From assembly GCF_000142905.1 (NCBI RefSeq), contig NW_013657662.1, positions 1 through 64,000 of the forward strand: DNA of 64,000 nt. Reading direction: 5' to 3'. Origin of the DNA: Thecamonas trahens ATCC 50062. Its lineage: Eukaryota > Protista > Apusomonadida. The notes beneath the pieces were generated by a model, which worked only from the letters and a program-made list of their open reading frames with translations, did not search any database and was not told the origin of the DNA. Positions within the stretch are counted from its first letter, which is position 1, and each line of letters starts with the position of its first letter. The translations under genes were made by a program, and so were the position numbers. This document shows, in pieces, positions 8,264 to 33,969 of this stretch.

Positions 8264-8284
8264 CCAGCGCCGGCTGGGTGGGGC

Positions 8285-8910: not shown

Positions 8911-9203
8911 GCCACGCGCTTGTCTGTCGCCCTTCGAGTTGGGAGTCGAGTACTCACTCAATTCGTCGAACCCGCACAACAGACGGCGGCGGGACCGGTC
9001 GCCTCAAGACGGCCCCGCATCTCGCGCGTCACTCGTGGAGATTTACTACAGACGAACCGGTGTGCCGCTCATGCAGCGGCCGTCATCAGCGCCAGCACGT
9101 GCCCACGATCAGCAAACTGTAGGCTAGCTTGCGGCAGCCGGCTACTCGTTGCGGCAGGACGTGCCCTGCTCATGGCCGCGTCCTACTGCAGGATGCAGAG
9201 CCG

Positions 9204-10271: not shown

Positions 10272-10427
10272 GGTTACCACTTGCTCTTCCTCACTCTCTG
10301 CTCTGCAGTACTTGCAGTTGTGCACTCTTTCCCGCACAAAGCCACAAGCTAGAGTCGAGTGACAGACCGCAAACCGCTGAGCTCGGCCGGCCACGGCGCA
10401 CTGGGCGCATACATTCAATGATGTGCC

Positions 10428-13274: not shown

Positions 13275-13474
13275 GTGAAGTGGTACTCCAACTCGATTAC
13301 TTTCCCTTCGGTCCCCTCGCCTTTACATCCTCGCTTCTCGGTCCCCAAAAGTTGACATTCACAAACTGTGCGCAGTATGTCACGGCAAACCCCACACCCC
13401 AATCACAAAAGCAATGAAGTCCGAGTTTCTGCCGAGACCCCCTCCACCCCCCCCCTCCCCCTCCCAATGACTCT

Positions 13475-13522
13475 CCACCACCACCACCACCACCACCACC
13501 ACCACCACCACCACCACCACCC
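13475..13522. repeat. (CCA)n microsatellite, ~16 units
   Basis: Perfect trinucleotide run in the divergent intergenic region. Confidence 0.95.
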
Positions 13523-13808
13523 CATCCCTTCCTTCCCCGTCCCTCCCTCCACCCCCAGCCCCCTTTGCCCTCCACCACCACCACCCACCCACCCACCCCT
13601 CCATCACCCCTCCTCTCGTACACACACCCTTCCTCCAAATCCCCTGTCCCGCATCAACCATCAACATTGTTCGTCAAAGCAGAAAGCCCAACCTCCAACG
13701 AGCTAAAACCACAGCCACTCCACCACCAGTATCGCATTCAACACCACACACGACCATACATCCCCACAATCACTCAGTCGTAGTGTGTGCCCTCTCGCCC
13801 GCGACGCT

Positions 13809-15021: not shown

Positions 15022-15133
15022 CGATGACCCTTAACGGTACGGTCGTTTGGGCGCGTTGTCGCCGGCCTCAAAGTGAACAACACAGTACATGATCAAGTCC
15101 TCGAACCCCCTGCTGCCGCTACACACCGGCCGA

Positions 15134-15170
15134 TCGGCGTCGCATGTCGGCGTCGCATGTCGGCGTCGCA
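15134..15170. repeat. 13-bp tandem repeat (TCGGCGTCGCATG) x~3
   Basis: Directly visible. Confidence 0.85.
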
Positions 15171-15873
15171 AGGCTGCCGCTTGAGAAACTGGGGCGTGCA
15201 AGCAATGCTCGCCATGCGTATCATCAATATGTGTGGGGTAACATAGCGTTGGGCGCTGATGTCATGTCCTGGAACGCGTTGACCAGTCTTTCCAATTCCG
15301 TCCCAAAATTGCTTTTGGACATACTGCCATGATGACACACTCTCGGCCATCAGCCGTGCTCCGCCGGCTCGACAGCTTGAGGTCAAAGTCGAAATAGGGC
15401 GCCCAACGGGCCGCCCGACGGCGGGAGGGGGGGGGAGGGGGCTTCCCCCTCCTTCAAAGCTGATTTTGTCGATGCCATCGGAGCAAACCAAGGTGCAAGC
15501 CGCTTCGCTTCGCTCACCCAGCCGTGGGTGCTAGCAGTCGCGGCAACACTCCCTGACCTACAGGTACGTTTGATACCGCCGGTCAACGCCGGTCAACGAC
15601 AATCAAGCCTCACGCTCGCCAGACTGACCCCACACACAGAGACCAGCCCACCACCACGACCCCCATCTGCCGCACACCCCACACACTCGCCCCATCAATG
15701 CATCCACGCATCCGCCCATACGCTTCCCCGCCCCCATCTGAGTGCCGCACTTTATTCCTCTTGCTGTCCAACTTTGATCCCTTCCGCCGAGATTACATTG
15801 ACATTGGACTCCCGTTTCCCCGCCAACGATCTTACACGCACCTCTCTCGTCACCCCCCCCCCTCATCACAGCT

Positions 15874-18800
15874 ATGCACCACCTCGTCCTCCTTACAATA
15901 TTAGGCCTCGCACTCGCCATCCTCGCTCCCTCAGCTGACACCGTCTCGGTCCGTCTTGTTGCCTTTTCCTCCCCCCTCGTAGATTGGTCGGCGCCTGCCA
16001 GCCAACTTGCGGCCTTTTTCGCCGCTGCGCCAAACGTAACACATTCGGCCGCAGCTGTTGTCGTCGATTCGCCGGGCCCGCTCGCCGACTACCTCCGTCT
16101 TGTCCAGCCGCCGCTCCCGGCCGACCTTGTTGCGCCGCATGGTCTTGCTACAAACATCGAGGATGTGTATGAGCTCTTTCAGCAACTTCCCGACGACCTT
16201 GCTGCAACCATCGTTCCCGACCTCATCCCCGCTGTTGTCCCACTGCTCACGGCACACCACGCGACCGATGCTCACCCGTCTCTCTACGGCGTACCGCTCC
16301 TCGCCGCCCCGGCCGTTTGCATCTTCAGCAAGCCCGCACTTGCTCGCATCGGCCTCTCACCGCCCACCTCCTGGTCCACCCTCCGCGCTACCTGTTCCAT
16401 CGCCGCCGACAAGCTGCCCGACATGGTCTCCTGCCTCGGCTTCCCATCTCGCCTTCCATCGAGCCTCTTTGACATGCTCGCCATCCGCACACACGGCGAT
16501 GCCTTCTTCCGCAACCTCACCGCCGGTGCCATCTCGCTCACAGACCCGCGCGTCGTCGCCATCGTCGACGACATCGCCTCTCTTGCCGACGTCCACCACT
16601 ACTCCGCCGCCGCCACCGAGCTCCAACTTTCGCCGGCAGACCTTTCGTCGTACCGCAGCCTTGCCCTCGGCCACAGCCTCATGGTCTGCGGTGAGACCCT
16701 GGATCACGCCGCTGCCGTATCTGCTGGCATGGATCCTAATAATCTCGGCGCTTTGCCTTTCCGCCCCTCGACTCGGATCCATCGCCAAGCCTCCCGTTGC
16801 CCTCGACAGCTGTCCTCGCCTCCATCTTTGCTCTATGCGCTCCCAAAGCCTCCATCGCCGGCCCGACTGCGCTCGACCTCGCGCGCTTCGCCGCCGACCC
16901 GGCCACTCTCGCCGCTCTCCTCGACGCCAATCCCGACCGCATTCCGCTCACCTCATCGCTCGCTACGCACCTCACCTCCGCCAACCTCCAGAGCCTCGCT
17001 GCCATCGTGTCCTCGGCCTCGGCACTCCTTCAGCACTCGGCCGTCTTTATCGGATCGACCTCGCTCACAACGGCCTGGAACGCCTTTCACAGCAACATGT
17101 TTCTCGCTCAGGCCTCACTCTCCTCGCCCCTCGTCCGCACCGAGGCCCTCGCCGATCTCGAAGCTCTGCGGCTCGAGTCGGTCCTCGCCCAGGTCGCACC
17201 GCCGCGCATTACCCACGACTCGGGCTCGTACCACACCCGCATCTCCGTAGGCATTTACTCGCCCACCGCCAACGCCGTCATCCACTACACCCTCGATGGC
17301 TCGCTGCCCTCGCACACCTCACCGCGCCTCGCCTCGCCACTCCTGCACATCGACCGAGATGGGAACGTTGCCCTCCGTGCCATCGCCATCGCCCCGGGCT
17401 CGCTCCGTCGCCTGTTGTGTTGCGCCTCTACCACTTGCCGCACTCATCCACGTCACCGCCGCCCATCTCCGCCTCCGTCATCGTCGCCATCTCCGCCTGC
17501 ACCCTCATCGGTTGCATCGCCGTGACACTCCTCGCTGTGCTGATCATCGTCCATCGCCGCCGTCGCCGCGCCTCGATTGACGCCGCCGACTGGGAGGCCC
17601 AACCCGCCAGCCCGTCCCTGCAAGCCGCCACTTCGTCGTCTTCAGTCGTCCTCGCTGCCGAGGAGGCCAACTCGTGTGGCCCCAACTTGGTCGACGACAA
17701 CATTTGCCTCCGTCCCAGCGACGTGGAATGCCTCCATCTTGTCGGTTCGGGCTCCTTTGGTGCCGTCTACACAGGCTCCTGGTCTGGCACCTCGGTCGCC
17801 ATCAAGCACCTCCGCCTCGCGCCCGCCGCCGCATCCTCGCCGGGCATCGTCGACGCCATCATCCAAGAGGTCGGCACGCTCGCCGCCATCACCGCCCCAA
17901 ACGTCGTCCACATCCTCGGCGCCCTCCAAACCCCGCTTGCCATCGTCTCAGAGTTTGCCGAGCGCGGCTCGCTGGCTGCCATCCTCACCTCCAATCACAC
18001 CATTCTCGACGCCTCGATCATCTTCAAGTGGGCCAACGACATTACCGCCGGCCTCGCCGCCCTCCACGCCGCTGGCGTTGTTCACGGCTCGCTCAATCCG
18101 CGCAACGTGCTCCTCGACTCCAACTGGGTTGCAAAGCTCGCAGACTATGGTCTTGCGCCTGCAAAGGGCGACCTCTCGCTCGTCGCCGCCTCACACGCCT
18201 TCGTCACCTCGACCCGGAAACTCCCGCCCGCCACCACCGATCAACTTGCCAACACCTGCCACTCGTCGCGCTCTAATCCTGGCGGCCCACCTCTTCACCG
18301 CTCCTCGCGCTCGGGTCAGTCGAGCGTTTTCGCCTCGCACGACTTGCTTGACTCGTCCATCACCTCGGCCGCGCTGGGCGATTCAACTCTCGTCTCGATT
18401 CCAGAGTACCCAGTAGGCGACGTCTCGGACCTCTACTACGCCGCGCCCGAGGTCATCGCCAATGGCCGCGCCGCCGTCTCCAAAGCCTCTGATCTCTTTG
18501 CCCTTGCAATCACGCTCTGGGAACTCACGTCGCGTCGCCGTGTCTACGCCGACCAGAACCCGCTAGCCGTCGCCGTCGAAGTCGCTCGGGGTGCCCGGCC
18601 GCCGCTAGAGGACATCCCGCCGACCTTTGCGCTCCTCGGCAACGTTACCTCGGGCCTCTGGGCCCAGAGCCCGGACGAGCGCCTCCCGCTCACCGACGCG
18701 CTCTCTCTCATGGCTGATCTCTTTGATCCAGAAGTAGTCATCTTCCCATCCGAGCCGCAAGCTCCCTTTGGCTCCATCCTCGCCGTCAAGGTCATCTTTC

Positions 18801-20470
18801 CGCAAGCCCTCTCGCTCCTTGCCGCCAACCCGGGGCTCTGCCATTCAGCACTTGTCGAATCACTCACCATGGTCGTCGACACCGTCGAGGCCGCCGCCGG
18901 CTGCGTTCTTGCGTCCCATCCGACTTCGGTCTTATTCTCGCTCCACAACCCGTCTGACGTTCACCCCATCGCCCTCGCTCTGCACGCTCGCTCCCCGACT
19001 GTCGGTCCGCCTGTTCTGCTTGCTGTCCGTGGCGTCATCGAGACGACCCGGTCTTCTCATGGAGAGTACAAGCTGGGTGGCGCGGTAATCGACGACCTTC
19101 TCAACCTCGAATCCAGGGTCGTCGCCGCTCCCGCCTCGCTCCCGTCCGAAGGCTGCTTGGCTCTCGTCGCCGACAGGCTCGCCGACGAACTCAAGCGCGC
19201 CCATGCCGCCTCGGGCACTGCCATCTCGCTCATTTCCCCGCCACCCGCACTCGCCTCGCTGCATCCTCCGATCTTGCGCATCGAGCTCCCCGCCGTCGTC
19301 GCGCCGAGCTTGAATATCAACTCGACCGGCTCGTCCATGAGCAAGACATCAACCACCCTGGAGACCCCGCGGACATTGCTCTCGGAACGCGTCTTGTCAT
19401 CGGGCAAGCCGCGCTCTTCCTTCGGCTCCTCCGGCTTGAACGACACCACCTTGCTCTCGCACGAGCTTGTCACCACCTCTACGCTCGCCGCCGTCGCCTT
19501 TCTCTCCGGCGCCGCGACGGAGAAGCTCATCCGTGGTGCCTCGCGCCCAGTCCGCGGCTCGTACGCCAACCTACGCCGGACTCGCTGGCAGACTCAGAGT
19601 GTGGTCGTCAAGCACCTGGTCACCCAGTCGTTTTCCAACCAGGAGCTCCTCGCCATTGCCGCAGATGTGGCGTCGGCTACCATCGCGGGCTCGGCCTCCA
19701 AGTGCCTCTCGCCGCCACTCGCTCTCTGCATCGAGCCGCCCAACGTCGCTATCATCTTCCCCCGCCTCCGCTACTGTACCCTCCGGACCATGGCCGTCCA
19801 TCCGGACGTCGTCCGCGCCCGCTACCCGTCGCTCCTTGTGCCGTCGCTCGACATTGTGTGCGCGCTCGGCACCGCCCTCATCGACGCCATCGAGGCGCTG
19901 CACATGGCTACCGGCGCCGCCCACGGCGCTCTCACGCCGTCCAACGTCTCGATCGTCCTCTCCTCCTCGGGCTTCCCCACTCGCGTCATCCTCTCGGACT
20001 TTGGCCTCGCCGCCATCCGAAGGCTTGTCGGCCCCAAGTGTATTCTCCCGTCCGCGTCATATGCCTCACCCGAGGTGCTCTCGGGCAAGACCATAGCCAA
20101 GCAGGCCGACACCTTTACCTTTGGCTCCATGCTCTACCAAATCGCCTGCGGCCAGCCCGCCTTTACCGGCAACAACGAGACCGTCACCGCCGCCCGGGTC
20201 ATCGCCGGCGACCACGCCCCGATTCCGTCCATGATCCCGGAACCACTCGCCCGACTCATCATCGACTGCTGGGCGCCTATCCCGGAGCGCCGACCCACCC
20301 CGTTGGTCATCCGCCACACCCTCTCCAACGTCTGCGCCCAGGCGCTTTCCACCGGTGCCACACCCCGGACTGATCCTGCCATAGCCGACTCCGACCCGCC
20401 TTCCCATCGCCGCTCCTACTCCTCCCCCCGAGGTGCGCGCCACCACACCCCTCGTTCTCCCGGTCGATGA
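15874..20470 (+). CDS. Receptor-like protein: signal peptide, solute-binding domain, CHB_HEX_C/Fn3-like domain, TM, TKL (pseudo)kinase, degenerate class III cyclase, second (pseudo)kinase; -1 breaks at ~16758 and ~17394
   Basis: Three overlapping ORFs join. SP MHHLVLLTILGLALAILAP; YGVPL...FSKPALARIGLSPPTSWSTL; IHYTLDGSLP; TM VIVAISACTLIGCIAVTLLAVLIIV-HRRRRR; VGSGSFGAVY..VAIK, HGSLNPRN, ADYG, YAAPE; APFGSILAV; HGALTPSN, SDFG, ASPE, CW..IPERRP. Confidence 0.85.
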
Positions 20471-20580
20471 CTGTAAAACCTGAACCGCCCCCTCTTGACC
20501 GTCACCCGTCGCGCCGACGGCCCACGCCCACGCCCACGCCCACTCCCACTCCACTCCCACACCCACACCTTTCTCTCCCC

Positions 20581-21782
20581 ATGTTTCGATTCCTCCATAC
20601 CACCGCCCGGTGGGGCCTGACCCTCGCTCCACCACTCGCTGCTGTCACTACCCTCTTGGTCTATGCCAACGACCTCGCAGATTGGCTCCTCTTCACCACC
20701 ACTGTCTACAACCTCGGCGGCTGGTTCGCCCCGGGCTCATCGCCATGGCTCCAACTTGTGGTCCTCTCGGCCATCATGGTTCCCTCCATTATCATCACTC
20801 TGCTCCTCACTTTCTGCTGCTCGATGTACATCTTCTTCAACTTGGCCCGCCTCCCGTCCCGCTCGACGGCCTGGTCGTCGCTCCGCTGCTCTCGCCCTCG
20901 CTCCTTGCTCAGTCGGACGACTCGGATGCTGGCGCCGCCGTCCTTGGCGAAGACGGCGTTGGCCTGCTCCTAGGTGACGTCGGCCTCTGCTCGGTCTATC
21001 CTGCCCTGGAAGAGCGTGATCCTCCCGCCGATGCCGGAGGCAGTGGCGGCCTCGTCGTCGCCAGCCTGCCCAGCTCCACGCCTGTCGGCGTCATCGAGTG
21101 GCTTGCTGCCGAGGCCGCAAACTCATGCGCTACCGAGTCGTATGACGTCCTTGTCCTCCGCAACCTCTTTGTCCTGCCGAGCTACACCAACCATGCAGTG
21201 CCGGCAAGTCTAGTCGCTGCTGCGATCGACGCGTATGCGGCGCAGGCGGCCAGCGGCAATGCCGAAGCCGCACCTGCGGGCCTTCTGCCTGCCGCGGTCG
21301 CCGTTGTGCCCGACGTTGCGGGCCAGCGCGCCTCGCGCATTGCCCGCCTCGCCTCTCGCATCCCGCTCCTCCGCCAGGTCTCGGTCCGGCAGACCAAGAT
21401 CCATGTGTACGCGCTCCCGCACGACCTTGCCGCCGCTGCCTGGCAACTCATCGCCTCGCACCGCGCCGAGCCGCTCGACTCCCAGCTCCTTGCCGTCTTT
21501 CCGCCGCCGCGGACCGAGATCCTTCGCGACGCCACCGACGCCCCAGTCGAGGTTGTCCACCTCGCGTGGCATGCGTCGCACGTCCCCGCCGACGGCTCCG
21601 CTGTCGCCGAGCCCGTCGACGACGCCATTCACCTGTTGGCACTGCCGGCCGGCGATTCGCTAGAGACACAGCTCCTCGACGACTTTCCACAAGCCCGCAC
21701 TACGGTCTCGCTCGCCATCGGCCTCTCCATCGGCCTCGACGACTCGGACTTTACCTGGTACTCGTCGGCTCTCATGTTCTGA
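20581..21782 (+). CDS. Membrane-anchored protein with possible degenerate GNAT-like fold; -1 break at ~20847
   Basis: Two N-terminal TM segments then a joined ORF (FFNLA-PPPVPLDGL...); LRNLFVLPSYTNHAVPASLV resembles GNAT motif A. Confidence 0.55.
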
Positions 21783-21811
21783 TGGCCTTGCAGAGTGTAC
21801 GCGAGCCTCAC

Positions 21812-22591
21812 TCACACAAACTCCTCGGCGTCGGCATCCCACGCAATGAGCGATGCCGGAATGCCGAGCCCAGCGAGCACCTGCTCCATGCTGAGCTTGG
21901 AGGTGGCGTCGCCGGCTGCGCGCGACCGCGACACAAGCGACTCCAGCGCCTCGACCGCCACCTCCTTCCACTTCATGAAGAGCGCCTCCAGCCGCTCGAT
22001 CTCGCCAGAGTCCTGAATCGAGCCGAGGACCCTGACCCGCGACAGCGCCTTACTCGCTGCTTGCACCTTTTTCCGCGCCTCGCGCACCAGCATTACGTCT
22101 GACATCGGCCGCGGGCCACCGCTCCCACGCCCAATCCGCTTTCCGTTCAAGCCCTTGCCGCGCTTGGTCGCCTGTCGCCGTCCACGCCCGCGCCCAGCCC
22201 CGCCCGGCCGCAGCAGCCTCATCCGCCGCCGCCGAAGCGTCGTCGTCGCGCTCTGCGGCGACGACGGCGACTTGGCTTTGCCGACTCTGCCGCCCTGGCC
22301 GCCGCCCCCGCTCCTTGCGGGCGAGGCAAGTCCGCCGCCCAGCACAGGCCCTGTCGCCTCTGCCGTCCGCCACCACACCTCGATCGTGCCCGTCTCACCT
22401 CTGTCGCCCTCTGTCGGCCACACCGCCTTGCGCACCGTCCCGGCCGCGAGCCATGCCGCCGCCGCAGCAGCCGCATCCTCCTCGGAGCACCCGGCGCCAG
22501 TCGCAAGCGTCGCCACCGTAAATGGCTCACCCACCGCAAGCTCCTCCACCGCAAGTCTCTCTGCCCCATGCTCCACACCCGATCTCGCCAT
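21812..22591 (-). CDS. SFR1: Sfr1/Mei5 family (Swi5-Sfr1 recombination mediator)
   Basis: C-terminal LEALFMKWKEVAVEALESL...LSMEQVLAGLGIPASLIAWDADAEEF matches the Mei5/Sfr1 conserved C-terminal domain. Confidence 0.75.
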   Translation of the reverse strand: MARSGVEHGAERLAVEELAVGEPFTVATLATGAGCSEEDAAAAAAAWLAAGTVRKAVWPTEGDRGETGTIEVWWRTAEATGPVLGGGLASPARSGGGGQGGRVGKAKSPSSPQSATTTLRRRRMRLLRPGGAGRGRGRRQATKRGKGLNGKRIGRGSGGPRPMSDVMLVREARKKVQAASKALSRVRVLGSIQDSGEIERLEALFMKWKEVAVEALESLVSRSRAAGDATSKLSMEQVLAGLGIPASLIAWDADAEEFV

Positions 22592-22771
22592 GCTGCAGAC
22601 ACGTGCTCCTCCACACCCACCGCCTGACGACCATCACAACGGTTACGCCTCGCCAAAACTACGACCTTTTTGGTCACGTCCACGCTTCGCCCGACATGAC
22701 CATGTCCGCATGCCATCAATTCCTTGTCGGGCAACACATGGCAACGCCATGGACAACCCCCCCCCGTACGC

Positions 22772-23265
22772 NNNNNNNNNNNNNNNNNNNNNNNNNNNNN
22801 NNNNNNNNNNNNNNNNNNNNNNNNNNNNNNNNNNNNNNNNNNNNNNNNNNNNNNNNNNNNNNNNNNNNNNNNNNNNNNNNNNNNNNNNNNNNNNNNNNNN
22901 NNNNNNNNNNNNNNNNNNNNNNNNNNNNNNNNNNNNNNNNNNNNNNNNNNNNNNNNNNNNNNNNNNNNNNNNNNNNNNNNNNNNNNNNNNNNNNNNNNNN
23001 NNNNNNNNNNNNNNNNNNNNNNNNNNNNNNNNNNNNNNNNNNNNNNNNNNNNNNNNNNNNNNNNNNNNNNNNNNNNNNNNNNNNNNNNNNNNNNNNNNNN
23101 NNNNNNNNNNNNNNNNNNNNNNNNNNNNNNNNNNNNNNNNNNNNNNNNNNNNNNNNNNNNNNNNNNNNNNNNNNNNNNNNNNNNNNNNNNNNNNNNNNNN
23201 NNNNNNNNNNNNNNNNNNNNNNNNNNNNNNNNNNNNNNNNNNNNNNNNNNNNNNNNNNNNNNNNN
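22772..23265. other. Assembly gap (N run)
   Basis: Run of N flanked by C-rich low-complexity sequence. Confidence 1.
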
Positions 23266-23457
23266 CGACCCCCATCAAGGTCAAGGACCACACCAGTACG
23301 GTCCCCACGGTATTGCATATTCCAATCCCTTTCCTCCAACCCCCCACCCCCCCACCCCCCGCTTTGCTCCTTCCCTGCCACACCAAACCCATCACGCCAT
23401 CCCACCACCTTCACCCTCCACACCCCACTTCCACCCGCAAGCGGACCCTTCCACTCC

Positions 23458-26292: not shown

Positions 26293-26350
26293 TTTTCCGG
26301 GATGCGAGCTGGTTTTGGTTCCTCCGCACATGTTGAGCGGTCTGCAGCTT

Positions 26351-28383
26351 TTACTCGGTGGCGGCAGCGACGAGCGGCTTGGTGCGCTTGGCCGGCGGCA
26401 GGTCCGCGTCTGCAGCAGACACAGGCACAGACGCACGCGTGGTTGCCGCGGCCGGTGGTTGGCTCTTGGGCACGTCGCGCTTCCGCTTGTGGGTCTTCTT
26501 GATGGTGTAGTAGTGGCAAGCATCGTCGCAGGTAAGCTGGGCACGGACCGGGAGAGGTGCAGAGTAAAGTATGGGTGCGCAATGGCAGCGGCGGCCGAGA
26601 TGCGCTTGTCTGGGTCGTAGGTGAAGAGCTTGTCAAGAAGGTCAAACGCCTGGGCGTCGATGCTCGGGAGCGAGTCGCGGAGGCGGCGGCGGGTGCGAGG
26701 AAAGTTGAACGAGTGGAAGAGCGGAAGAGCCGAGAGGCCCGGCCACTCAGCCTCTGTCGGCGTTCCGCAGACCTTGACGATGGCCATCATCAGGTCTTTC
26801 TCCTTGTCGGCGCGGAACAGGGTCCGCCCGCCGGTGAGGAGCTCAACAAAGATGCAGCCGATGGACCACATGTCGACGGCCGGGCCATAGCTGTCGCCGC
26901 CGAGGAGAAGCTCGGGTGGGCGGTACTGGAGGGTGATGACCTTGTTGGTGTAGCGCGCGCTCTGGTCGATCTGGCGGGCAAGGCCAAAGTCGGCGAGCTT
27001 GAGCACGCCGTCCTTGGAAACAAGCAGGTTGGCGGCCTTGATGTCGCGGTGCAGAATGCCCATCTGGTGGGTGTATGCGACGGACGCGAGGAGCTGAAGC
27101 ATAAAGTCCTTCACCTGCCCGGCCTCCATCTTGGGCGCGTTGACCGACTCGAGCAGGCCACTCAGGTCGTGATCCACATACTCAAACACCATGTACACCG
27201 AGCCGCGGACTGACGAGTGGACCGTCTCGGCCTCGGGCTCGGAAATGACAACCTCCTTGAGGTTGACAATGTTGGGGTGCTTGAGGTGCTTCAGAATCTT
27301 GATCTCGCGGATGGCAGTGATGGGGAAGCCCTCGCGCTTCTGCCGGTCGGCACGGATCTTCTTCAGTGCCACCACGTCGCCAGTCGCCTTGTCAGTGGCG
27401 CGGTAGACTTGCCCGTACGTGCCCTCGCCAATCTGGTCGACGTCGCCAAACTCAAACGCCGCAATGGTTCGCGAGCCCCACGCCGCTGCGTTGTTGCGCG
27501 GGACAGCTGGCGCCCGGCTGCCCTCCTCTGCCGCCAGCCGCGAGAAAACAGTACCACGGCCAGTGCCCGAGCTGGCGCTTGCAGTCTGGTTGTACGCCCG
27601 GTCTCCGTTGCTGCGCCGCTCGTGGTGCTCGCGCATGCCAGCACGCCGGTCGTGGAACTCGCGGTACTCGCGCGGTATGGGCTCGCCGCGCTGGTCAACA
27701 TGCTCGCCGCGGCGCGGGTAGTGCTCGCGCCCGCGCGGCTCGCCGCGCCGATCGTGGTACGCGCCACGACCGCGGTCGCGGTCACGGTGGGCCCAGTCGT
27801 CGCCGCGCCGGCGATCGCTGCCGCCGGCGTCACCACTGCCGCCTGCGCCTGAAACAGCGCCTGCGCCAGTACCGCGCCGCCCACTGTTGTAATCGCGCCG
27901 GTACTCGTCGCGCCCACCGCGATAATCGTAACGGTAGTCGTAGCCGCTGCGGTCGCCACCGCGGTCACCGCCACGGTCCCCACCGCGGTCGCCGCCACGG
28001 TTAGCACCTCGACTGCCGCCGCGGTCGCCACCGCGGTCATAGCCGCGGTCGCCACCGCGATCGCCGCCGCGGTCGCCGCCACGGCCGCTGCCGCGGTCGC
28101 CGCCACGGCCGCTGCCGCGGTCGCCGCCACGATCGTATCCACGATCGTAGCCGCGATCGTAGCTGCCACGGTCGCCGCCACGAGGAGGCGGGTGCGAGTG
28201 CGGGTGCGGAAGCGGGCGCCCGCCGCCGCGCGGGCCGCCGCGATCACCACGCGACCCACGGTCATACTCGTACTCTCGCGGCGAGTCGCGAGCTCTGTCT
28301 CGATAGTCTCTCCGCATGCCACCGCCGTTCGGATACCTTGGCGACGGGTTATGTGACCGATTAGGAGTGCCACTTGCTGACAT
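26351..28383 (-). CDS. PITAIRE cyclin-dependent kinase (CDK12/13/CDKC-type CTD kinase) with RGG/RD-rich N-terminus; -1 break at ~26567
   Basis: IGEGTYGQVY, VALKK, GFPITAIREIK, HRDIKAANLL, DFGLAR, YTNKVIT; corrected end HPYF-SAPLPVRAQ...KRTKPLVAAATE* stops at 26351, so the 1070-aa ORF extending into the RNase II gene is artefactual. Confidence 0.92.
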
Positions 28384-28702
28384 GTTTCTCTTGCAGCTTG
28401 TCAATATCCTTGGTGTTCTCGAACTTGTTGTTGGCTGCCACAGCTCCTCAGCTCTGTTCCGTCGACCGTCCAGACCCGCCAAACCATCATCGTCATCATC
28501 GTCACCATCATCATCGCCAACCACAAGTATGAGTAACTCCCTGTCTCCCATTTATAGCCGCCTGCAATGGCCATGGCCTCTATCATCTTCAGGCCCATAC
28601 CCTCCGCTTATCACACTCGCCCACACCCGCCGCCACATCCGTCCACTTGTGCTGTGTCATCGAGTGGAAGGGGGGGGGCATGTGCTTGCACTGGCAGTGT
28701 AT

Positions 28703-28704
<2 letters not shown>

Positions 28705-28753
<49 letters not shown>
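28705..28753. repeat. (AG)n microsatellite, ~24 units
   Basis: Perfect dinucleotide run. Confidence 0.95.
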
Positions 28754-28759
<6 letters not shown>

Positions 28760-29666
28760 AGTGATGGGATTGGAGCTTTCTGGGTTGTAGGGGAGAGGGA
28801 GGACTGGTCGCATCGATTGCTATCGATTGGCATCCGGGGGGGTCAGGAGGAGGAGAGGGGGGGGGAGGGGGGTCGCAGCGAGGCACACACACGAGGGTTT
28901 GGGCGACCTGGGTTGGGCGACCTGGACAGGGCAGGGGAGCGAAAGGAGAGAAGGGACGAGGGGGAGAAGGGGAGAAGGGGGGAGGGAGGGGAATAAGGCG
29001 AGGGGGAGAAGGGGGGGGGGGCGTACCAGTTGCGTTGGAAAAGGTGGTGCGGGTGGGGGTGGTGGCCGTGGTGGCCGTGGTGGGTCTGTGCGAGTTGTGG
29101 AAGGCGCGGGAAATTTGGGTTTTTCCCCCGGTCTCGGAGCGAGGCAAGCACAGCGAGATGGAACGAGGTCTTAGCGGAGCTTTGGAAGTCCGGAGGATAG
29201 TGAGATAAAGGGAGGGAGATGCGCAGATGAGAGTGTACGATGGTACGATACTTCTTTCTTCGATCTTCTGTCTCTCTCTCTCTCGGTGTTCTGGCCAGTC
29301 TCGGTCACAACCTTGTTGCCGCCGAGCTTGCGCTTGATCAAGTCGAGGTCAGCAACAACCACAGCGATGACCCGAGGGTGACGTGGTAGTGTGGGTATGT
29401 GTGTGTGTGGGGGGGGGGGGGGGTGAGAGAGAGAGGGGGGAGGAGGAAGAGAGGTAAGGGAGAGTGAGGTGTGGAAGGGGGTGGTTGTGGTGGTGGCGGA
29501 GAGGGGGTGCCGGTGGTGCCGCGTGGCTTGAGTGCGGATCGGGATCGGGATCCTGATCAATGGGCTCGGACGCGCGTGTGTGGATGGGGAGGGGAGGGGG
29601 ATAGAAACGGCGATCGCAGAGGAATAGGTGTAATTGTGGCACAAGAGGCAAGAGATGCATGGTTGG

Positions 29667-32600
29667 TTACAAAGCAGAGAGCGCACGGAGTAGCTCTTCA
29701 CACGAGGGGCGGAGGGCAGGATCGGCATTCCAGCAGCGATGGATGAGTGGAGTTAGGGGGAAGGATGGTCGAGCAGAGGCATGTCACTGCTGGCGATGTG
29801 AGCGGCAGCAACCATGACATTGAGCGAGTCGTAGGGGCGATGGCCAGTGAGGAGGGTGTAGAGAACCGAGCCGATGGCAAAGACATCGGTAGCGAGGGAG
29901 ATGGGTGCGAGGGACGGGTTGATCTGCTCAGGAGCCGAGAGGAGGGAATCGAGGTGGGTGCTGGGGGCGATGATTGCGCGGATGCTGGCAGACCAGGTGT
30001 CGGAGAGGATAATGTCGATGGGCGCGGTGCGGGCGGCGTCAAAGCGAACAAATATGTTGCCAAGGGTGAGAGAGCCGTGACAGGTCTGGGAGAGGCGATG
30101 CAGGTCTGAGACGGCGCGGACGAGGCCGAGGGCGAGGACGTTAAGGATGCCCGGGGCGAGCGGAAGGGTAAGCGACGGATGCTTGATGGTGGCACGAGCG
30201 TCGAGGACCATGGCCAGCGATGTTGTCCGGATCTGCTGCATGACGACGGCGAGAAACGGCGGCTCGAGACAGATGGCGACAGGCGCCTTGATGCGCGACG
30301 AGATGGTGGCCAGGCGCGCGGCGACGGCGACGGCCTGGGCAAACATGATGAGCTCGCGGGCCGGAGGCTCCGAGTGTGGAGCCGCTTGATGATGATGGGG
30401 CAGTTGTTCCACTGCGAGCGCGAGAGTGTGCCGATGGATGACACCACATCCTTGCCGCGCTTGGCATATAGAAGGCGGTGAAGGCGCCGCGATGAGACAA
30501 AGGCAATGTTTCGCGAGGGCGGCTCGCCGGTCGATGAGGGGAACGGTGCCGAGTCGAGGGTGGCACCGGCCGACAACGGCGGCAACAGCGGCCATCGTGA
30601 TTTAGAGCCGCCATGCGAGCCCGAGCCGGGTGCCGAGGAGGTTGAGTGGAGCGATGGTGAGCGCAGACGGAGAGGGAAGGAGCCCAACGATGGTATGGTG
30701 TGCTTGAGCACGTGAAGAATAGAGTCAAACGGGTCGGGCTGCAAGGTTGGCGGTGCGACGGCGGCAAGCGCGATTTGGAGCATCGGCGGCGCCGAGTCGG
30801 GCATGCCGACCGGCTCGATGAGCGAGAGCGGGATGCCGGTCGCCGCGTGGGCGCGCTGGATCTCGTCGGAGAGCTTGGAGAGGACCAAAGCGGTGCAGCT
30901 GTTGGCATAGACATCGGGGCAAGCCTCGCACGCGCGAGAGGCGGCGGCCGCCATGGCCCCGACAATGGTCATGATTTGGCCGGCAAGCATGTACTCGCCG
31001 GGGAGCGCGGAGCGGCGAGTCTCAATGACGCCGCGGAGGGCAAGGAGGCGGATGCTGCCGAGCGAGAGCGAGAGGCCATGGAGGGCGTGAGCGAGGTTGG
31101 AGATCTCAGACGCGTGATGGAGGGTGGCGATGATGGTTTCGGGCCTGGCTCGGAGAATGGTACCGCCAGCCTGGTCGACCAGCGTCGTGACATGGGAGTG
31201 AAACGAGTTGAGGAGTCCGGCGCCGCGGATGGGCGAGCGCGCCATCCGCTCCAGCGCACCCGGGAGAGACATGGAGACGAGGATGACCGATCCAAACGGA
31301 GCCTCGGGCGCCGAAGGCAGGATGACCACCTCGGGCGAGTACAAGTCGGCGAGGAGCGGGACAAGATCGGCGACGGGAAGGCGCTCGTCCGGAGTGTGGT
31401 CCCACAGCACCGGGATGAGGGTGGCAAGCGGTGATAACTGCGGCGGGATGCCGGCGACGTCGGGCCGCAGGCCCTTGGAGACCTCAAAGGCGATGGCGAC
31501 AGGTGACTCGCCATCGTAGACACGGCGGCGTGTGGCGAGCTCAAAAAGTGTGATGCCGAGCGCGTAGATGTCGGAGGCCATCGTCGGGACCGGTACTTCG
31601 GAGCCAAGCAGCTCGGGAGCAGCCCAGTAGAGGCCGGCGAGCTCAGCCTGTTGAGCATAGCTCGCCCGACTGCCCTCGCCCTCGGACTCGGAGAGCTCCA
31701 TCGAGAGATCGCGCATGTCCTCGTAGGCGGCGAGGACACCGCGCGAGCGAAAGGACGAGAGTGAGCCACGGCCCGAATCGCAGATCGAGGACGTGGCAAA
31801 GTTGGTTGTCGAGGTGTAGCGCGACGGTTCGGCGACAACGGCCTGCAACGAGAGCTGCGACTTGACTTTGAAGAGGCCAAAGTCGGTGAGCATCGGCGTC
31901 CAGTCGTTGGCGAGGACCACGTTGAGTGACTTGAGCGAGCCATGAACAATGCCAGCGGCGTGTAGAGCAGCGAGGCCGACAGCGATCTCGTGGGCCCATC
32001 GGAGAATGATAGTCGAGTCGAGGATGAGGCGCGGGTTAAGGAGCGCGGCGTGGAGCGAGCCACGCGGCGCATAGTCGGTGACCAGCGCCGGCGTGCCGAG
32101 GCCGAGGCAGACGCCTCGGAACCGGATGAGGTTCGGCGCCGAGAGCACGGTGAGCTTGGATGCTTCGGCGAGGACGTCGTCGGCGAGGCCAAAGGCGATG
32201 TGCTTGATAATGACGTGCTCGTCGTCGAGCACCGCGAGACTCACCCGGCCGTACGTGCCCTTGGCCTGCTCCTCCACCTCGCGTAGCTCCTCAGCGTCGA
32301 TGATGGGCACGTTGCTGACGTCGACGGTACCGCTCTGCCGCCGTTTGCGGGTGAGGAGAAGGAGAGCCACCATGCCGACAAGGACAGCAATGACGATGAT
32401 AAAGATGGCAAGCGCGAGCGCGATCTGGATCTGGGACCGCGCCTGCTTGCCACTGACACGTGGCGCACCGGCGAGGGTGTAGGAAGCGACGACGACCGGC
32501 GCAGCCGCCAGACCGGGCCGGAGTGCAATGATCTGAATGGTGGCCGAGCGCTCGAGGTCGATGACGAGCGGCACCGGCGTCGACGGCGAGTCGGCAAGAC

Positions 32601-33969
32601 TTGGCGTCGAGCCGTCGAGCGTGTAGAAAAGGATGGTGTCATTGGCGGCGGTAGCAGCAGTCGTGATGTTGACAGTGAGGCTGGCGACCGGGTGCGAGCC
32701 GGGCAATGGCACAAAGAGCGGTGGCGCGCTCCGGCCCTCGATCTCAGCAAGACGGAGAGCCTCGAGATTGGCGAGGTCGTCTTGCAAAGAGTCGCGGTGG
32801 AGAAACGCCGGAAGCGCGGCGAGCCAGGCGTCGCCAACAGCGGCGACAGCAAAGGCGCGCGATGAAGGCGCGGTGATACGCAAAGCGGCCCATACCGCAT
32901 CGGCGGTCTGGGCGAAGAGTCCAGGCGAGGCCGAGGCCAGGAGGGAGGCCCGCAGCGGGAGCGCACCATTGGCCTCGAGCTCGGGCGCTGCGGCATGCAG
33001 GGCCGCAATCGAACCGAGCCACGAGAGGTAGTCGAGGGCGTCGGCCGGGACAAGAGCGCGGAGCGGGATGGCGGCGGCGGTGGTGATCCCGACAACCACA
33101 CCGGGTGCTGCCGGGAAGACGCCGGCAACCAGGTCGTCGGCCGGCAGCTGGGCATCGGCAAGCAAGTGCGAAATCGAGCCGCAGACGGCAAAAGCCGCGT
33201 TGGATGCGAGCGCAGCAGCCGAGAATGAGAGCTCCGAGAGGAAGCCGTCAAGATCACTCGCGGCAGATGAGAGGACATCGGTCATCTCGGGACCGTCAAA
33301 AGGGAGCTTGCCGGCCCGAAAGCTGGCATAGTCGTCGGGCTCGAGGCCAGCAGCGAGGATCGAGTCGATGGCAAAGGTTGGCGAGCGTGAGTCAAGCGCC
33401 AGACACGCGGCGTGGCCGCCAACATCGGGAAGGCTGCGAAAGCTGGTGCAACTGGCCTTGAGCTGGAGCAGCGAGTCTGGGAAAGACGAGAGGCCGAGCC
33501 TCTCCAGCTGGGTCTTCGTGGTCACGCACATTAAAGGCTCGATCCACAGAGGAAGGGCAAGGCGGCGCGAGCGATCGACGGCGGTAGCGGCATAATCGGC
33601 CAACCCGGCAGGCAGCTCGGCGCCCAAGTTCAGCGTGTCAGCGACGGCCGTCACATCGCGCAAGACCGCGTCCGAGACCAGATAGTCGAGCGGAGGGCCA
33701 TCAAAGTACGGGACTACGTCCGGAGTCAGAAGTGATGCGATCCATGGCTCGTAGGCGGAAGGAAGGGCGGGACATGACTCGAAAGCCAGGGTGACATTGA
33801 GGCCGGTGGCCGTGTGGGCTTGTTCCGCAAGGGCAGCGGGCCAGAACTTGCATGCCACCTGAGAGAGCGATGCCGCGGATCCTGGTCGTGCGCATGCAAG
33901 AGCAAGAGCAAATAATAATACATGGATCCACCATGTCACGGACCTTGCAACTCTTGTAGCCTTTCCCAT
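29667..33969 (-). CDS. Paralogous receptor-like protein: SP, solute-binding domain, CHB_HEX_C/Fn3-like domain, TM, (pseudo)kinase, degenerate cyclase, (pseudo)kinase; -1 breaks at ~30363 and ~29758
   Basis: SP WWIHVLLFALALACARPGSA; RLALPLWIEPLMCVTTKTQLERLGLSSFPDSL; FYTLDGSTP; TM IALALAIFIIVIAVLVGMVALLLL-TRKRR; KGTYG..VIIK, HGSLKSLN, TDFG, WAAPE; APFGSVILV; HGSLTLGN, SAPE; corrected end LIHRCWNADPALRPSCEELLRALSAL*. Confidence 0.85.

What the first reader, a model, noticed from the sequence alone, without database searches (positions are those of the whole stretch)
15874..33969. Paralogous receptors coupling a bacterial-type solute-binding ectodomain to a kinase-cyclase-kinase module
Seen: after repairing single-base breaks, two genes (15874-20470 +, 29667-33969 -) share the same order: signal peptide, ~400-aa ectodomain, YTLDGSxP-containing CHB_HEX_C/Fn3-associated domain, one TM helix with a basic stop-transfer, TKL kinase, APFGS-initiated cyclase-like segment, second kinase. 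Knowledge: the ectodomain motifs (YGVPL..FSK..L..IGL.PP.SW..L; PADALDYLSWLGS) follow the pattern of ABC-transporter sugar-binding proteins (SBP_bac_1 / type II PBP). Kinase-cyclase-kinase cytoplasmic modules are known from Acanthamoeba and mimiviruses. Inference: this is a family of cell-surface nutrient or prey-glycan sensors built from a bacterial periplasmic binding fold. It is invisible in the ORF track because each gene is split into three frames.
Basis: partly seen in the sequence, partly recalled or inferred. Interest (0 to 1): 0.85.

Follow-up and report, generated by a model that had tools for sequence, protein, structure and literature searches.

The report
Sugar-binding-domain receptor kinases with dead cyclase
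Two neighbouring genes of the marine flagellate Thecamonas trahens encode cell-surface receptors that join a bacterial-type sugar-binding domain to a kinase, a dead cyclase-like domain and a dead kinase, which extends a receptor design so far reported only from Acanthamoeba and its giant viruses.

Summary
Genes 15874-20470 (+) and 29667-33969 (-) are paralogues (about 33% identity). Both have the same order: signal peptide, about 400-aa ectodomain, CHB_HEX_C/Fn3_assoc domain, one TM helix, TKL kinase, an APFGS-initiated middle domain, and a second kinase.

- **Family.** About 27 loci in this 28.7-Mb genome belong to it. Intact paralogues pass Pfam SBP_bac_1/SBP_bac_8, and the family profile hits solved sugar-binding proteins (AcbH, E 3.5e-26).
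- **Middle domain.** It models confidently (pLDDT 88) as a class III cyclase fold (Rv1900c, E 3e-8). It fails PF00211 and lacks both metal-binding Asp in the 13 copies aligned.
- **Kinases.** Kinase 2 lacks the catalytic Asp wherever the loop was read (10 of 13 paralogues). In these two genes kinase 1 lacks it too (HGS).
- **Frame breaks.** There are four, each equal to one missing base. One (16750) is an assembly error: three independent read sets carry an extra T. The other three sit in C/G runs and were not tested.
- **N gap.** The gap at 22772-23265 lies in an RNB-domain gene between the two receptors and touches neither.
- **Novelty.** The Acanthamoeba kinase-cyclase-kinase receptors already carry a periplasmic-binding-type ectodomain (PBP_like_2). 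This is a new variant in a new lineage, so far undescribed.
- **Function.** Glycan sensing is inferred, not shown.

The parts
15874..20470 (+). Gene 1, whole receptor gene (three frames in the assembly)
   Evidence: The NCBI model P0111 covers only 16423-16689, 16809-17414, 17612-20353 and 20910-21779.
15874..15939 (+). Gene 1 signal peptide (MHHLVLLTILGLALAILAPSAD)
   Evidence: Read from the translation. No predictor was run.
15946..17216 (+). Gene 1 SBP_bac_1-like ectodomain
   Evidence: The family profile A2 matches 15946-16767 (positions 4-271, E 9e-31) and 16752-17399 (positions 268-484, E 2e-34). The N-terminal piece alone hits sugar SBPs in the PDB at E 0.006-0.03. All four family-invariant Cys are kept.
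16750..16751 (+). Gene 1 frame break 1: the assembly lacks one T here (assembly error)
   Evidence: Contigs from X5 and X6 (two metagenome studies) both carry a T behind 16750, and X8's loose end TCTTTGCCTTT agrees. With that T the reading continues as ..NLGVFAFPPLD.., matching the paralogues' NL.VF.FP..D.
17217..17399 (+). Gene 1 CHB_HEX_C_1 / Fn3_assoc domain (HYTLDGSLPS)
   Evidence: Pfam gives 35.5 bits (cut-off 22) and 25.4 bits (cut-off 23).
17392..17399 (+). Gene 1 frame break 2, in the run CCCCGGGC. Equals one missing base. Not verified.
   Evidence: No contig reported an indel here, and coverage was thin.
17477..17551 (+). Gene 1 TM helix, followed by HRRRRR
   Evidence: It lies inside an 'intron' of the NCBI model.
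17732..18718 (+). Gene 1 kinase 1 (TKL-like, with a large insert). Catalytic loop HGSLNPRN, DYG.
   Evidence: Pfam Pkinase E 6e-46 for the piece. Motifs.
18719..19297 (+). Gene 1 cyclase-homology-like domain (degenerate), starts ..EPQAPFGS
   Evidence: 42% identical to the gene 2 domain that was modelled. Alignment A1.
19502..20299 (+). Gene 1 kinase 2 (pseudokinase: HGALTPSN, DFG)
29667..33969 (-). Gene 2, whole receptor gene
33871..33969 (-). Gene 2 signal peptide (MGKATRVARSVTWWIHVLLFALALACARPGSAA)
   Evidence: Read from the translation. No predictor was run.
32674..33882 (-). Gene 2 SBP_bac_1-like ectodomain (divergent)
   Evidence: It matches four intact SBP-positive paralogues at E 5.5e-18 to 1e-11 over residues 60-488. 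It gives no Pfam or PDB hit on its own. The model is poor, but all top Foldseek hits are MBP or sugar SBPs.
32479..32673 (-). Gene 2 CHB_HEX_C_1 / Fn3_assoc domain (FYTLDGSTPS)
   Evidence: Pfam E 1e-4 and 7e-4, just under both cut-offs. It aligns with the paralogues' domain.
32350..32430 (-). Gene 2 TM helix, followed by TRKRRQ
31345..32268 (-). Gene 2 kinase 1 (HGSLKSLN, DFG; degenerate Gly loop)
   Evidence: Pfam PK_Tyr_Ser-Thr E 1.4e-24. Motifs.
30757..31344 (-). Gene 2 cyclase-homology-like domain (degenerate)
   Evidence: AF2 pLDDT 88.3, pTM 0.83. The Foldseek PDB top hits are all class III cyclases: 1ybt E 3.4e-8, TM 0.66/0.74. There is no PF00211 hit.
29670..30396 (-). Gene 2 kinase 2 (pseudokinase), ending ..CWNADPALRPS..
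30355..30367 (-). Gene 2 frame break 1, in CCTCCGGCCCGCG. Equals one missing base. Not verified.
29756..29762 (-). Gene 2 frame break 2, in a C5 run. Equals one missing base. Not verified.

Best explanation
These are two anciently diverged sister paralogues of a large Thecamonas trahens family of type I membrane receptors.

Outside the cell:
- A signal peptide is followed by a bacterial ABC-type carbohydrate solute-binding domain (SBP_bac_1 class), with four conserved Cys.
- A CHB_HEX_C Ig-like domain follows and acts as a stalk.

Inside the cell, after one TM helix:
- a TKL kinase;
- a class III cyclase-homology domain that has lost its catalytic metal-binding residues;
- a second kinase that lacks the catalytic Asp.

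Inferred mechanism:
- A soluble sugar or oligosaccharide closes the two-lobed binding domain.
- The change is passed through the TM helix to the cytoplasmic module.
- The dead cyclase-like domain and the pseudokinase serve as dimerisation and regulatory scaffolds. Output comes from kinase 1 in the paralogues that keep HGD...DFG.
- Genes 1 and 2 belong to a subclade whose kinase 1 has also lost the catalytic Asp (HGS). They most likely act as non-catalytic co-receptors or modulators of active paralogues, not as enzymes.

The frame breaks are assembly errors: one is shown to be, three are inferred.

What is shown: architecture, homology of each domain, loss of catalytic residues, family size, and one break being an error. 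What is inferred: ligand class, signalling route, and the co-receptor role.
For: Architecture and paralogy.

SBP identity:
- Four intact paralogues pass SBP_bac_1 or SBP_bac_8 (best E 9.4e-15).
- The family profile A2 hits AcbH 3ooa at E 3.5e-26. All other strong hits are sugar or oligosaccharide SBPs, including the chitin-oligosaccharide binders NagB1/2.
- The gene 1 piece alone hits the same proteins.

Cyclase fold:
- AF2 pLDDT 88.
- Foldseek gives 178 PDB hits at E<=1e-3, and all top hits are class III cyclases.
- hhalign against Thecamonas' own true cyclases gives E 4.9e-4 over the first 76 columns.
- The A1 profile also picks up one bona fide PF00211 locus.

Degeneracy:
- PF00211 finds 53 places in the genome but none of the 13 middle-domain loci.
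- The positions aligned with the FTD and GD Asp are non-acidic in almost all 13 copies; one copy has a Glu at the first site.

Kinase motifs: K1 is HGD in most paralogues but HGS in genes 1 and 2. K2 is HG[AS]L in the 10 of 13 paralogues where the loop was read.

Age:
- Genes 1 and 2 are sisters (SH-aLRT 98). Their next relative, P0083, has HGN.
- Branches are about 1 change per site, and both genes keep long ORFs (P about 3e-11).

Assembly error: an extra T at 16750 appears in three independent data sets.

The same uninterrupted architecture occurs on a marine metagenome contig.
Against: - Neither gene's own ectodomain reaches a Pfam SBP threshold, and gene 2's gives no PDB hit alone.
- The ectodomain model is poor (pLDDT 53), so the two-lobed fold is not shown for these genes.
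- Three of the four breaks are unverified.
- Variants of gene 1 in environmental contigs are 6 synonymous to 15 non-synonymous, which is near the neutral ratio. This rests on low-depth contigs; only 5 sites are seen twice (2 synonymous, 3 non-synonymous).
- With all three cytoplasmic domains predicted dead, there is no obvious output.
- The dimer prediction gave no verdict.
- No ligand, expression or localisation data exist. The one 'RNA' run laid on the gene is only a guess at RNA.
Confidence: 0.65

Rival explanations
1. Genes 1 and 2 are decaying pseudogene copies of the receptor family. The frame breaks other than 16750 are real, and the loss of catalytic residues reflects loss of function.
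For: - Three breaks are unverified.
- The catalytic Asp is lost in both kinases, and the cyclase-like domain is dead.
- Environmental variants of gene 1 are 6 synonymous to 15 non-synonymous, close to the neutral expectation of 27% synonymous.
- Gene 2's ectodomain is the most divergent in the family.
Against: - The one break that could be tested is an assembly error.
- All four breaks have the same sign (one missing base). Similar splits occur at 6 of about 27 family loci in this 2010-11 assembly, which points to a technical cause.
- No in-frame stop occurs in 1213 and 990 codons.
- The HGS state is shared by two sisters that have since diverged to 33% identity and still keep every structural invariant, including four Cys and the kinase subdomain XI motif CW..DP..RPS.
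Confidence: 0.15
2. They are catalytically working kinase-cyclase-kinase receptors like those of Acanthamoeba. The middle domain makes cAMP or cGMP using unconventional residues.
For: - The position and fold are the same as the cyclase domain in Mastigella (kinase-Guanylate_cyc-kinase) and Acanthamoeba.
- The junction motif AP.G.V.LV is shared with true Thecamonas cyclases.
Against: - There is no PF00211 hit at E<=0.01 at any of the 13 loci, although the same search finds 53 true cyclase domains in this genome.
- Both metal-binding Asp positions are non-acidic in almost every aligned copy.
- Established knowledge of class III cyclases is that these two Asp are essential for two-metal catalysis.
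Confidence: 0.05
3. The SBP ectodomain is not a signalling sensor. It captures substrate for uptake or adhesion, as was proposed for the Plasmodiophora SBP-7TM fusions that were called 'transporters', and the cytoplasmic part is only an anchor or scaffold.
For: - The closest solved relatives are ABC-transporter binding proteins.
- The Plasmodiophora authors read similar SBP_bac_1/CHB_HEX fusions as transporters.
- The cytoplasmic domains of genes 1 and 2 look catalytically dead.
Against: - A single TM helix cannot form a transport path.
- Most paralogues keep an apparently active kinase 1 (HGD, DFG).
- The same kinase module is combined in this genome with other sensor-type ectodomains: PBP_like_2, TIG and Kelch. 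That is the pattern of a receptor family.
Confidence: 0.1

Closest known systems
Acanthamoeba castellanii receptor nucleotidyl cyclases (67 genes; Clarke et al. 2013, PMC4053784) and their giant-virus counterparts (e.g. Pandoravirus Ser/Thr kinases)
   Same: - The order is the same: signal peptide, bacterial periplasmic-binding-type ectodomain, a small extracellular spacer domain, one TM helix, kinase, cyclase-fold domain, kinase.
- Kinase 1 of the Thecamonas family finds Pandoravirus (E 1e-66), Mastigamoeba and Mastigella proteins as its nearest named non-Thecamonas relatives.
   Different: - The ectodomain here is SBP_bac_1 (sugar class) plus CHB_HEX_C, not PBP_like_2 (phosphate class) plus EGF.
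- The cyclase domain is degenerate (no PF00211 hit, no metal Asp).
- Kinase 2, and in genes 1 and 2 also kinase 1, lacks the catalytic Asp.
- The host is an apusomonad, not an amoebozoan. The 2013 paper called the configuration unique to Acanthamoeba among cellular organisms.
- A PBP_like_2 + kinase member (P0202) also exists in Thecamonas.
Archamoebae relatives: Mastigella eilhardi P0239 (kinase - Guanylate_cyc - kinase) and Mastigamoeba balamuthi P0211 (SBP_bac_1/8 + kinases)
   Same: P0239 has the three-part cytoplasmic module with a true cyclase. P0211 has an SBP_bac_1-type domain in front of the kinases.
   Different: - They are only 35-36% identical in kinase 1 and fall outside the Thecamonas + marine-metagenome clade.
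- P0211 lacks a CHB_HEX_C hit and carries a DUF5714 region, which may be a gene-model fusion.
- Neither has been studied.
Plasmodiophora brassicae SBP-7TM fusions (Rolfe et al. 2016, PMC4815078)
   Same: Bacterial SBP_bac_1, CHB_HEX or PBP_like_2 ectodomains are fused to a eukaryotic membrane signalling module.
   Different: The output module there is a class C GPCR-like 7tm_3 domain, not a single TM helix plus kinases. The organism is a rhizarian. The authors interpreted the fusions as transporters.
Bacterial ABC carbohydrate-binding proteins (AcbH 3ooa, 3vxb, NagB1/NagB2 7ehp/7eho, XOS-binding 3zkk)
   Same: The sequence-profile match runs over about 310 of about 400 residues, covering both lobes. 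The signature YG.P....(c)vY.k..f...G...PP.TW.el is present.
   Different: The domain here is part of a eukaryotic type I membrane protein. It has four conserved Cys, no lipobox, no ABC partner, and identity to the solved proteins below 20%.
Animal receptor guanylyl cyclases (GC-A: ANF_receptor ectodomain - TM - pseudokinase - cyclase)
   Same: A periplasmic-binding-fold ectodomain, a single TM helix, a kinase-like domain and a class III cyclase fold. GC-A is among the Foldseek hits (9bcs, E 3.3e-7).
   Different: - The ectodomain there is a type I PBP fold.
- The live and dead roles are reversed: there the kinase is dead and the cyclase is alive.
- There is no second kinase.

Membership tests
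SBP_bac_1 / SBP_bac_8 (Pfam PF01547 / PF13416; ABC-type extracellular solute-binding proteins, type II binding fold) | Pfam HMM match above the gathering score | tested here: not met
   Genes 1 and 2 give no SBP hit at E<=0.1. The feature is met by four intact paralogues: 55.8, 35.5, 33.2 and 32.4 bits against cut-offs of 26 and 27.
SBP_bac_1 / SBP_bac_8 (Pfam PF01547 / PF13416; ABC-type extracellular solute-binding proteins, type II binding fold) | Homology to solved sugar-binding proteins over both lobes | tested here: met
   The family profile, which includes gene 2, hits AcbH at E 3.5e-26 (profile positions 25-340 against chain residues 45-346 of 415), and about 50 further sugar SBPs follow. 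Gene 1's N-terminal piece alone gives E 0.006-0.03 to the same proteins. Gene 2 alone gives none, but it matches the paralogues at E 5.5e-18.
SBP_bac_1 / SBP_bac_8 (Pfam PF01547 / PF13416; ABC-type extracellular solute-binding proteins, type II binding fold) | Two-lobed fold with a hinge | tested here: inconclusive
   The AF2 model of the gene 2 ectodomain, built from 5 sequences, has pLDDT 53 and pTM 0.33. All top Foldseek hits are MBP or sugar SBPs, but TM is only about 0.3.
CHB_HEX_C_1 / Fn3_assoc (PF13290 / PF13287) | Pfam HMM match above the gathering score | tested here: met
   Gene 1 gives 35.5 and 25.4 bits against cut-offs of 22 and 23. Gene 2 gives 19.9 and 22.6 bits, just below (E 7e-4 and 1e-4). 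The paralogues give 54-62 bits.
Eukaryotic protein kinase (Pkinase / PK_Tyr_Ser-Thr), active enzyme | Pfam HMM match | tested here: met
   Gene 1 gives E 6e-46 in three stretches. Gene 2 gives E 1.4e-24 for kinase 1 and E 9e-6 (25.7 bits, below the 31.7 cut-off) for the kinase 2 piece.
Eukaryotic protein kinase (Pkinase / PK_Tyr_Ser-Thr), active enzyme | Catalytic Asp of the HRD loop, besides the beta-3 Lys and the DFG Asp | tested here: not met
   K1 reads HGSLNPRN in gene 1 and HGSLKSLN in gene 2. K2 reads HGALTPSN in gene 1 and CHGSLTLGN in gene 2. The Lys (VAIK / VIIK) and the DYG / DFG Asp are present in K1. Most paralogues have HGDFKSLN in K1.
Class III nucleotidyl cyclase (Guanylate_cyc, PF00211) | Pfam HMM match | tested here: not met
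   There is no hit on genes 1 or 2. A genome-wide PF00211 scan finds 53 places but none of the 13 middle-domain loci.
Class III nucleotidyl cyclase (Guanylate_cyc, PF00211) | Cyclase-homology-domain fold | tested here: met
   The model has pLDDT 88.3. Foldseek gives Rv1900c at E 3.4e-8 with TM 0.66/0.74, and Cya2, CyaC, sGC, GC-A and Ma1120 all at probability 1.00. Giant-virus cyclase proteins are found in BFVD.
Class III nucleotidyl cyclase (Guanylate_cyc, PF00211) | Two metal-binding Asp (F-x-D on strand 1; G-D in the beta2-beta3 hairpin) | tested here: not met
   In A1 these columns hold S, V, C, A, T, R or L and, in most copies, G. One copy has a Glu at the first site. The alignments to Ma1120 and to Thecamonas' true cyclases place the Asp over these columns. 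Both sequence alignments are weak (E about 1 and 5e-4).
Acanthamoeba-type receptor kinase-cyclase-kinase | Order: signal peptide, binding-protein ectodomain, TM, kinase, cyclase-fold domain, kinase | tested here: met
   compared with the description in PMC4053784 and its supplement.
Acanthamoeba-type receptor kinase-cyclase-kinase | PBP_like_2 + EGF ectodomain and a recognisable Guanylate_cyc domain | tested here: not met
   The ectodomain is SBP_bac_1 + CHB_HEX_C, and there is no PF00211 hit.
Acanthamoeba-type receptor kinase-cyclase-kinase | Common descent with the Acanthamoeba genes | not tested
   No Acanthamoeba sequence was retrieved. Pandoravirus, Mastigella and Mastigamoeba relatives form the out-group in a quick tree.

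The most novel reading that the evidence does not exclude
Receptors that join a bacterial solute-binding ectodomain to a kinase - cyclase-fold - kinase module are an old, modular receptor class of Amorphea, found in apusomonads and Amoebozoa and captured by giant viruses. In it, the ectodomain (sugar SBP, phosphate PBP, TIG, Kelch) is swapped and the enzymatic parts are repeatedly silenced. Genes 1 and 2 would then represent a long-lived, fully non-catalytic subclade that signals only by pairing with active paralogues, comparable to pseudokinase receptors such as ErbB3.
Probability: 0.3. Interest if true: 0.7.

Novelty: new variant of a known kind. Interest (0 to 1): 0.55.

Why it matters
- **Lineage range.** The 2013 Acanthamoeba genome paper stated that the ectodomain - TM - kinase - cyclase - kinase configuration was unique to Acanthamoeba among cellular organisms. 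It is found here in an apusomonad, a sister lineage of animals and fungi. About 27 loci carry the sugar-binding-type ectodomain, and further members carry other ectodomains. Related forms occur in Archamoebae and in uncultured marine eukaryotes. This changes where and when the receptor class arose and from whom giant viruses could have taken it.
- **Possible function.** It is a candidate system for how a bacterivorous flagellate senses dissolved or prey-derived carbohydrates.
- **Pseudoenzyme series.** The family offers a natural series: live kinase, dead kinase and dead cyclase within one family.
- **Annotation.** The public gene model of gene 1 removes the signal peptide, half of the binding domain and the TM helix by inventing introns around assembly errors. 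The family is therefore under-recognised in databases, where members are named only 'TKL protein kinase'.

Tried and rejected
- **The search for homologous proteins, gene 2 ectodomain:** blank. This is a word-index and length-window limit, not evidence of absence.
- **phmmer, gene 2 ectodomain against the PDB:** blank.
- **AF2 of the gene 2 ectodomain** with a 5-sequence alignment: too poor to judge the fold.
- **hhalign of the middle-domain profile against single sequences** (Mastigella P0239, Mastigamoeba P0211): not significant, although the best alignment lands on the start of the P0239 cyclase domain.
- **Complex prediction, two copies of the middle domain:** no verdict (score 0.00, alignment not used). 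This is neither for nor against dimerisation.
- **Metagenome DNA pattern across break 2 of gene 1:** no match.
- **The search for related loci in metagenomes with A3:** only generic kinase hits at 24-50% identity, and no family member.
- **The exhaustive profile search (A3):** its top 150 was swamped by bacterial proteins with many CHB_HEX_C repeats. Bacterial SBPs and Acanthamoeba proteins could therefore not be ranked, and no SBP phylogeny was built.
- **ESM Atlas look-alikes:** only generic kinase and SBP clusters.
- **The search of earlier findings:** nothing for this place or these words.
- **Introns as the cause of the breaks:** rejected. Homology to the paralogues runs continuously across each break, with overlaps or gaps of at most about 30 nt, and reads show the missing base at 16750.
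- **Kinases next to true cyclase loci:** none of the 20 best true cyclase loci of the genome has a family-type kinase within 1.5 kb.

Pieces were searched apart by reference, and one script alignment read gene 1 through with X at both breaks.

Full report
**Source and setting.** The window is contig C18:1-64000 of a 28.7-Mb, 131-contig, roughly 65% GC eukaryotic genome. An intact paralogue is 100% identical to AMSG_11954 of Thecamonas trahens ATCC 50062, so that is the organism. The DNA runs that hold the stretch best date from 2010-11 and hold only about 16 million letters each. That fits an early pyrosequencing-era assembly, which is my inference.

**The assembly gap.**
- The N run at 22772-23265 lies inside a + strand ORF (22522-26292) whose downstream part carries an RNB exoribonuclease domain.
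- Gene 1 ends at 20470. Gene 2 occupies 29667-33969. The gap touches neither gene.
- Only the roughly 9-kb spacing of the two genes depends on the scaffold join.
- I did not resolve continuity or frame across the gap. Nothing in the finding depends on it.

**Observation.** Gene 1 starts at ATG 15874 and stops at 20468-20470. The assembly reads it in three frames:
- frame 1 to 16750;
- frame 3 to about 17396;
- frame 2 from there to the end.

Gene 2 starts at 33969 on the minus strand:
- one frame carries 1213 codons, covering signal peptide, ectodomain, stalk, TM, kinase 1, the middle domain and the start of kinase 2;
- a second frame carries most of kinase 2;
- a third frame carries the last 29 codons (..LIHRCWNADPALRPSCEELLRALSAL) up to the TAA at 29669-29667.

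Further checks:
- The two genes align at 32-34% identity, E 1e-88 to 1e-103.
- Pfam confirms CHB_HEX_C_1/Fn3_assoc and two kinase regions in each gene. It gives no SBP and no Guanylate_cyc hit on these two genes.
- An open frame of 1213 codons has a chance probability of about 3e-11 at this composition.

**The frame breaks.**
- Homology to the paralogues runs straight through each break, with overlaps or gaps of a few bases. These are therefore not introns.
- All four breaks shift the frame in the direction of one missing base.
- Three of them sit in C/G runs: CCCCGGGC, CCTCCGGCCCGCG and CCTTCCCCCT.
- For the break at 16750, contigs from two metagenomes of different studies (X5 estuary, X6 marine) both carry an extra T behind 16750. 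A 2020 run labelled with the same species (X8) ends with TCTTTGCCTTT, which is the same insertion.
- With that T the reading becomes ..NLGVFAFPPLD.., matching the paralogues' NL.VF.FP..D. This break is an assembly error.
- The other three breaks could not be tested. Read laying allowed one call, and a metagenome pattern search found nothing.
- Six of about 27 family loci in this assembly are split in the same way, which points to a technical cause.
- The public gene model P0111 works around the errors by starting at 16423 and treating 16690-16808, 17415-17611 and 20354-20909 as introns. This removes the signal peptide, half of the binding domain and the TM helix at 17477-17551.

**The family.**
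- With gene 2's ectodomain as query, the genome holds intact single-ORF paralogues of 1442-1671 aa.
- All four that I examined pass SBP_bac_1 or SBP_bac_8 (best E 9.4e-15). They also pass CHB_HEX_C_1 (54-62 bits) and, apart from one copy whose second kinase was not found, two kinase regions.
- A profile of the ectodomain finds about 27 loci. A profile of the middle domain finds about 32.
- Database members named by their source are all T. trahens, labelled 'TKL protein kinase' or 'extracellular solute-binding protein family 1'.
- Unnamed members at 33-45% identity come from marine metagenome assemblies. One is an uninterrupted 1495-aa ORF on a Tara Oceans contig among ordinary eukaryotic genes.
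- The same kinase module occurs in this genome behind other ectodomains: PBP_like_2, TIG and Kelch.

**Ectodomain.**
- The five-sequence profile, which includes gene 2, matches solved bacterial ABC carbohydrate-binding proteins. These are AcbH (E 3.5e-26), a sugar-binding lipoprotein 3vxb (1.4e-23), the chitin-oligosaccharide binders NagB1/2, and xylo-oligosaccharide and glucose binders. The match covers about 310 residues.
- Gene 1's N-terminal piece alone reaches the same proteins at E 0.006-0.03.
- Gene 2 alone reaches none, but it matches the SBP-positive paralogues at E 5.5e-18 over residues 60-488.
- Four Cys are invariant in all six sequences, gene 1 included. This would fit disulfides in an extracellular eukaryotic domain, which is my inference.
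- The AF2 model of gene 2's ectodomain is poor (pLDDT 53). All of its top Foldseek hits are MBP or sugar SBPs, but at TM about 0.3.
- So homology to the SBP class is well supported for the family. The two-lobed fold of these two genes is not yet shown.

**Middle domain.**
- A 13-paralogue alignment (A1) gave a confident model: pLDDT 88.3, pTM 0.83.
- Foldseek lists only class III nucleotidyl cyclases at the top. These are Rv1900c (E 3.4e-8, TM 0.66/0.74), Cya2, CyaC, soluble and receptor guanylyl cyclases, and Ma1120.
- In the viral library it finds giant-virus cyclase-domain proteins, including Pandoravirus 'Ser/Thr kinases'.
- At sequence level the link is weak but consistent:
  - The only cyclase among the PDB profile hits is Ma1120, at E 1.1.
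  - hhalign against nine true Thecamonas cyclase domains gives E 4.9e-4 over the first 76 columns.
  - The A1 profile picks up one locus (C38:177962) that is also a PF00211 hit.
- PF00211 finds 53 places in the genome but none of the 13 middle-domain loci.
- The columns aligned with the two metal-binding Asp (FTD, GD) are non-acidic in almost every copy.
As an enzyme it is dead.

**Kinases.**
- Kinase 1 reads HGDFKSLN...DFG in most paralogues. It reads HGS in genes 1 and 2.
- Kinase 2 reads HG[AS]L..N in the 10 of 13 paralogues where the loop was read.
- In a quick maximum-likelihood tree, genes 1 and 2 are sisters (SH-aLRT 98). Their next relative, P0083, has HGN (SH-aLRT 97). Terminal branches are about one change per site.
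- The loss of the catalytic Asp is therefore old, and both genes have kept long ORFs since. That argues for a retained non-catalytic role rather than recent decay.
- Against this, environmental variants of gene 1 are 6 synonymous to 15 non-synonymous, close to neutral. These come from contigs at depth 2-5, and only five sites are seen in two runs.

**What is known.**
- Clarke et al. 2013 describe 67 Acanthamoeba nucleotidyl cyclases with an extracellular receptor domain, one TM helix, and a cyclase flanked by two kinases. They call this 'unique for a cellular organism' and shared with giant viruses.
- New here are the SBP_bac_1 + CHB_HEX_C ectodomain, the silenced cyclase and kinases, and the apusomonad host.
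- Related forms exist in Mastigella (kinase - true cyclase - kinase), Mastigamoeba (SBP_bac_1 + kinases) and Pandoravirus (PBP_like_2 + EGF + kinases).
- Plasmodiophora fuses SBP_bac_1/CHB_HEX/PBP_like_2 to a 7tm_3 module.
- Full-text searches found no paper on this Thecamonas family.

**Verdict.**
- It is a new variant of a known receptor kind in a new lineage.
- The two window genes are the most degenerate members of the family.
- Their apparent fragmentation is at least partly, and probably wholly, an assembly artefact.
- Glycan sensing and a co-receptor role are inferences that need ligand and activity assays.

Noticed in passing
window 22522-26292 (+), N gap at 22772-23265: An RNB-domain (RNase II / Dis3-like) gene spans the assembly gap. 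Pfam RNB gives E 4.6e-57 at about 24979-25897. Whether its N-terminal part before the gap is in frame is unknown.
   Followed up: partly
window 25339-28551 (-): An unrelated Ser/Thr kinase gene lies here (Pkinase E 9.5e-68, about 26565-27438). It has a 12-nt tandem repeat (GCCGCCGCGGTC x 15.5) at 27943-28128 in its N-terminal coding part. Its ORF tail overlaps the RNB ORF on the other strand, probably a high-GC artefact.
   Followed up: partly
window 16423-21779; protein P0111: The public gene model of gene 1 invents introns at 16690-16808 and 17415-17611 around assembly errors. It also splices 20353 to 20910, adding a 290-aa downstream ORF (20910-21779) that has no Pfam hit. Whether this last splice is real is unknown.
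   Followed up: partly
G000: C64:21193/22029, C34:72151/72954, C2:162479/162994, C2:392380/393121, C18:462008/462872: Five further family loci have their ectodomain split between frames with no intron-sized gap. Single-base assembly errors therefore seem common in this genome and probably distort many gene models.
   Followed up: no
G000:C18:462008-463297 (same contig, outside the window); cluster C64:21193-35968: Another family member lies about 430 kb further along the same contig. Contig C64 carries three family members within about 15 kb, a tandem array.
   Followed up: no
whole genome G000: PF00211 (Guanylate_cyc) matches 53 places in a 28.7-Mb genome, which is a very large cyclase repertoire. 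None of the 20 best has a family-type kinase within 1.5 kb.
   Followed up: partly
protein P0206 (ENA contig of 73,645 bases): A 2227-aa PBP_like_2 + kinase protein from a metagenome contig groups with Pandoravirus kinases (SH-aLRT 99). The contig may be a giant virus or an Acanthamoeba-like genome.
   Followed up: no
window 12000-34000: GC skew follows the coding strand. It is about -0.3 over the + strand gene 1 and about +0.25 over the - strand gene 2, so the coding strand is C-rich.
   Followed up: no
window 1-2000: GC skew is very strongly negative here (-0.47), at lower GC (0.60) than the rest of the window. I did not look into it.
   Followed up: no
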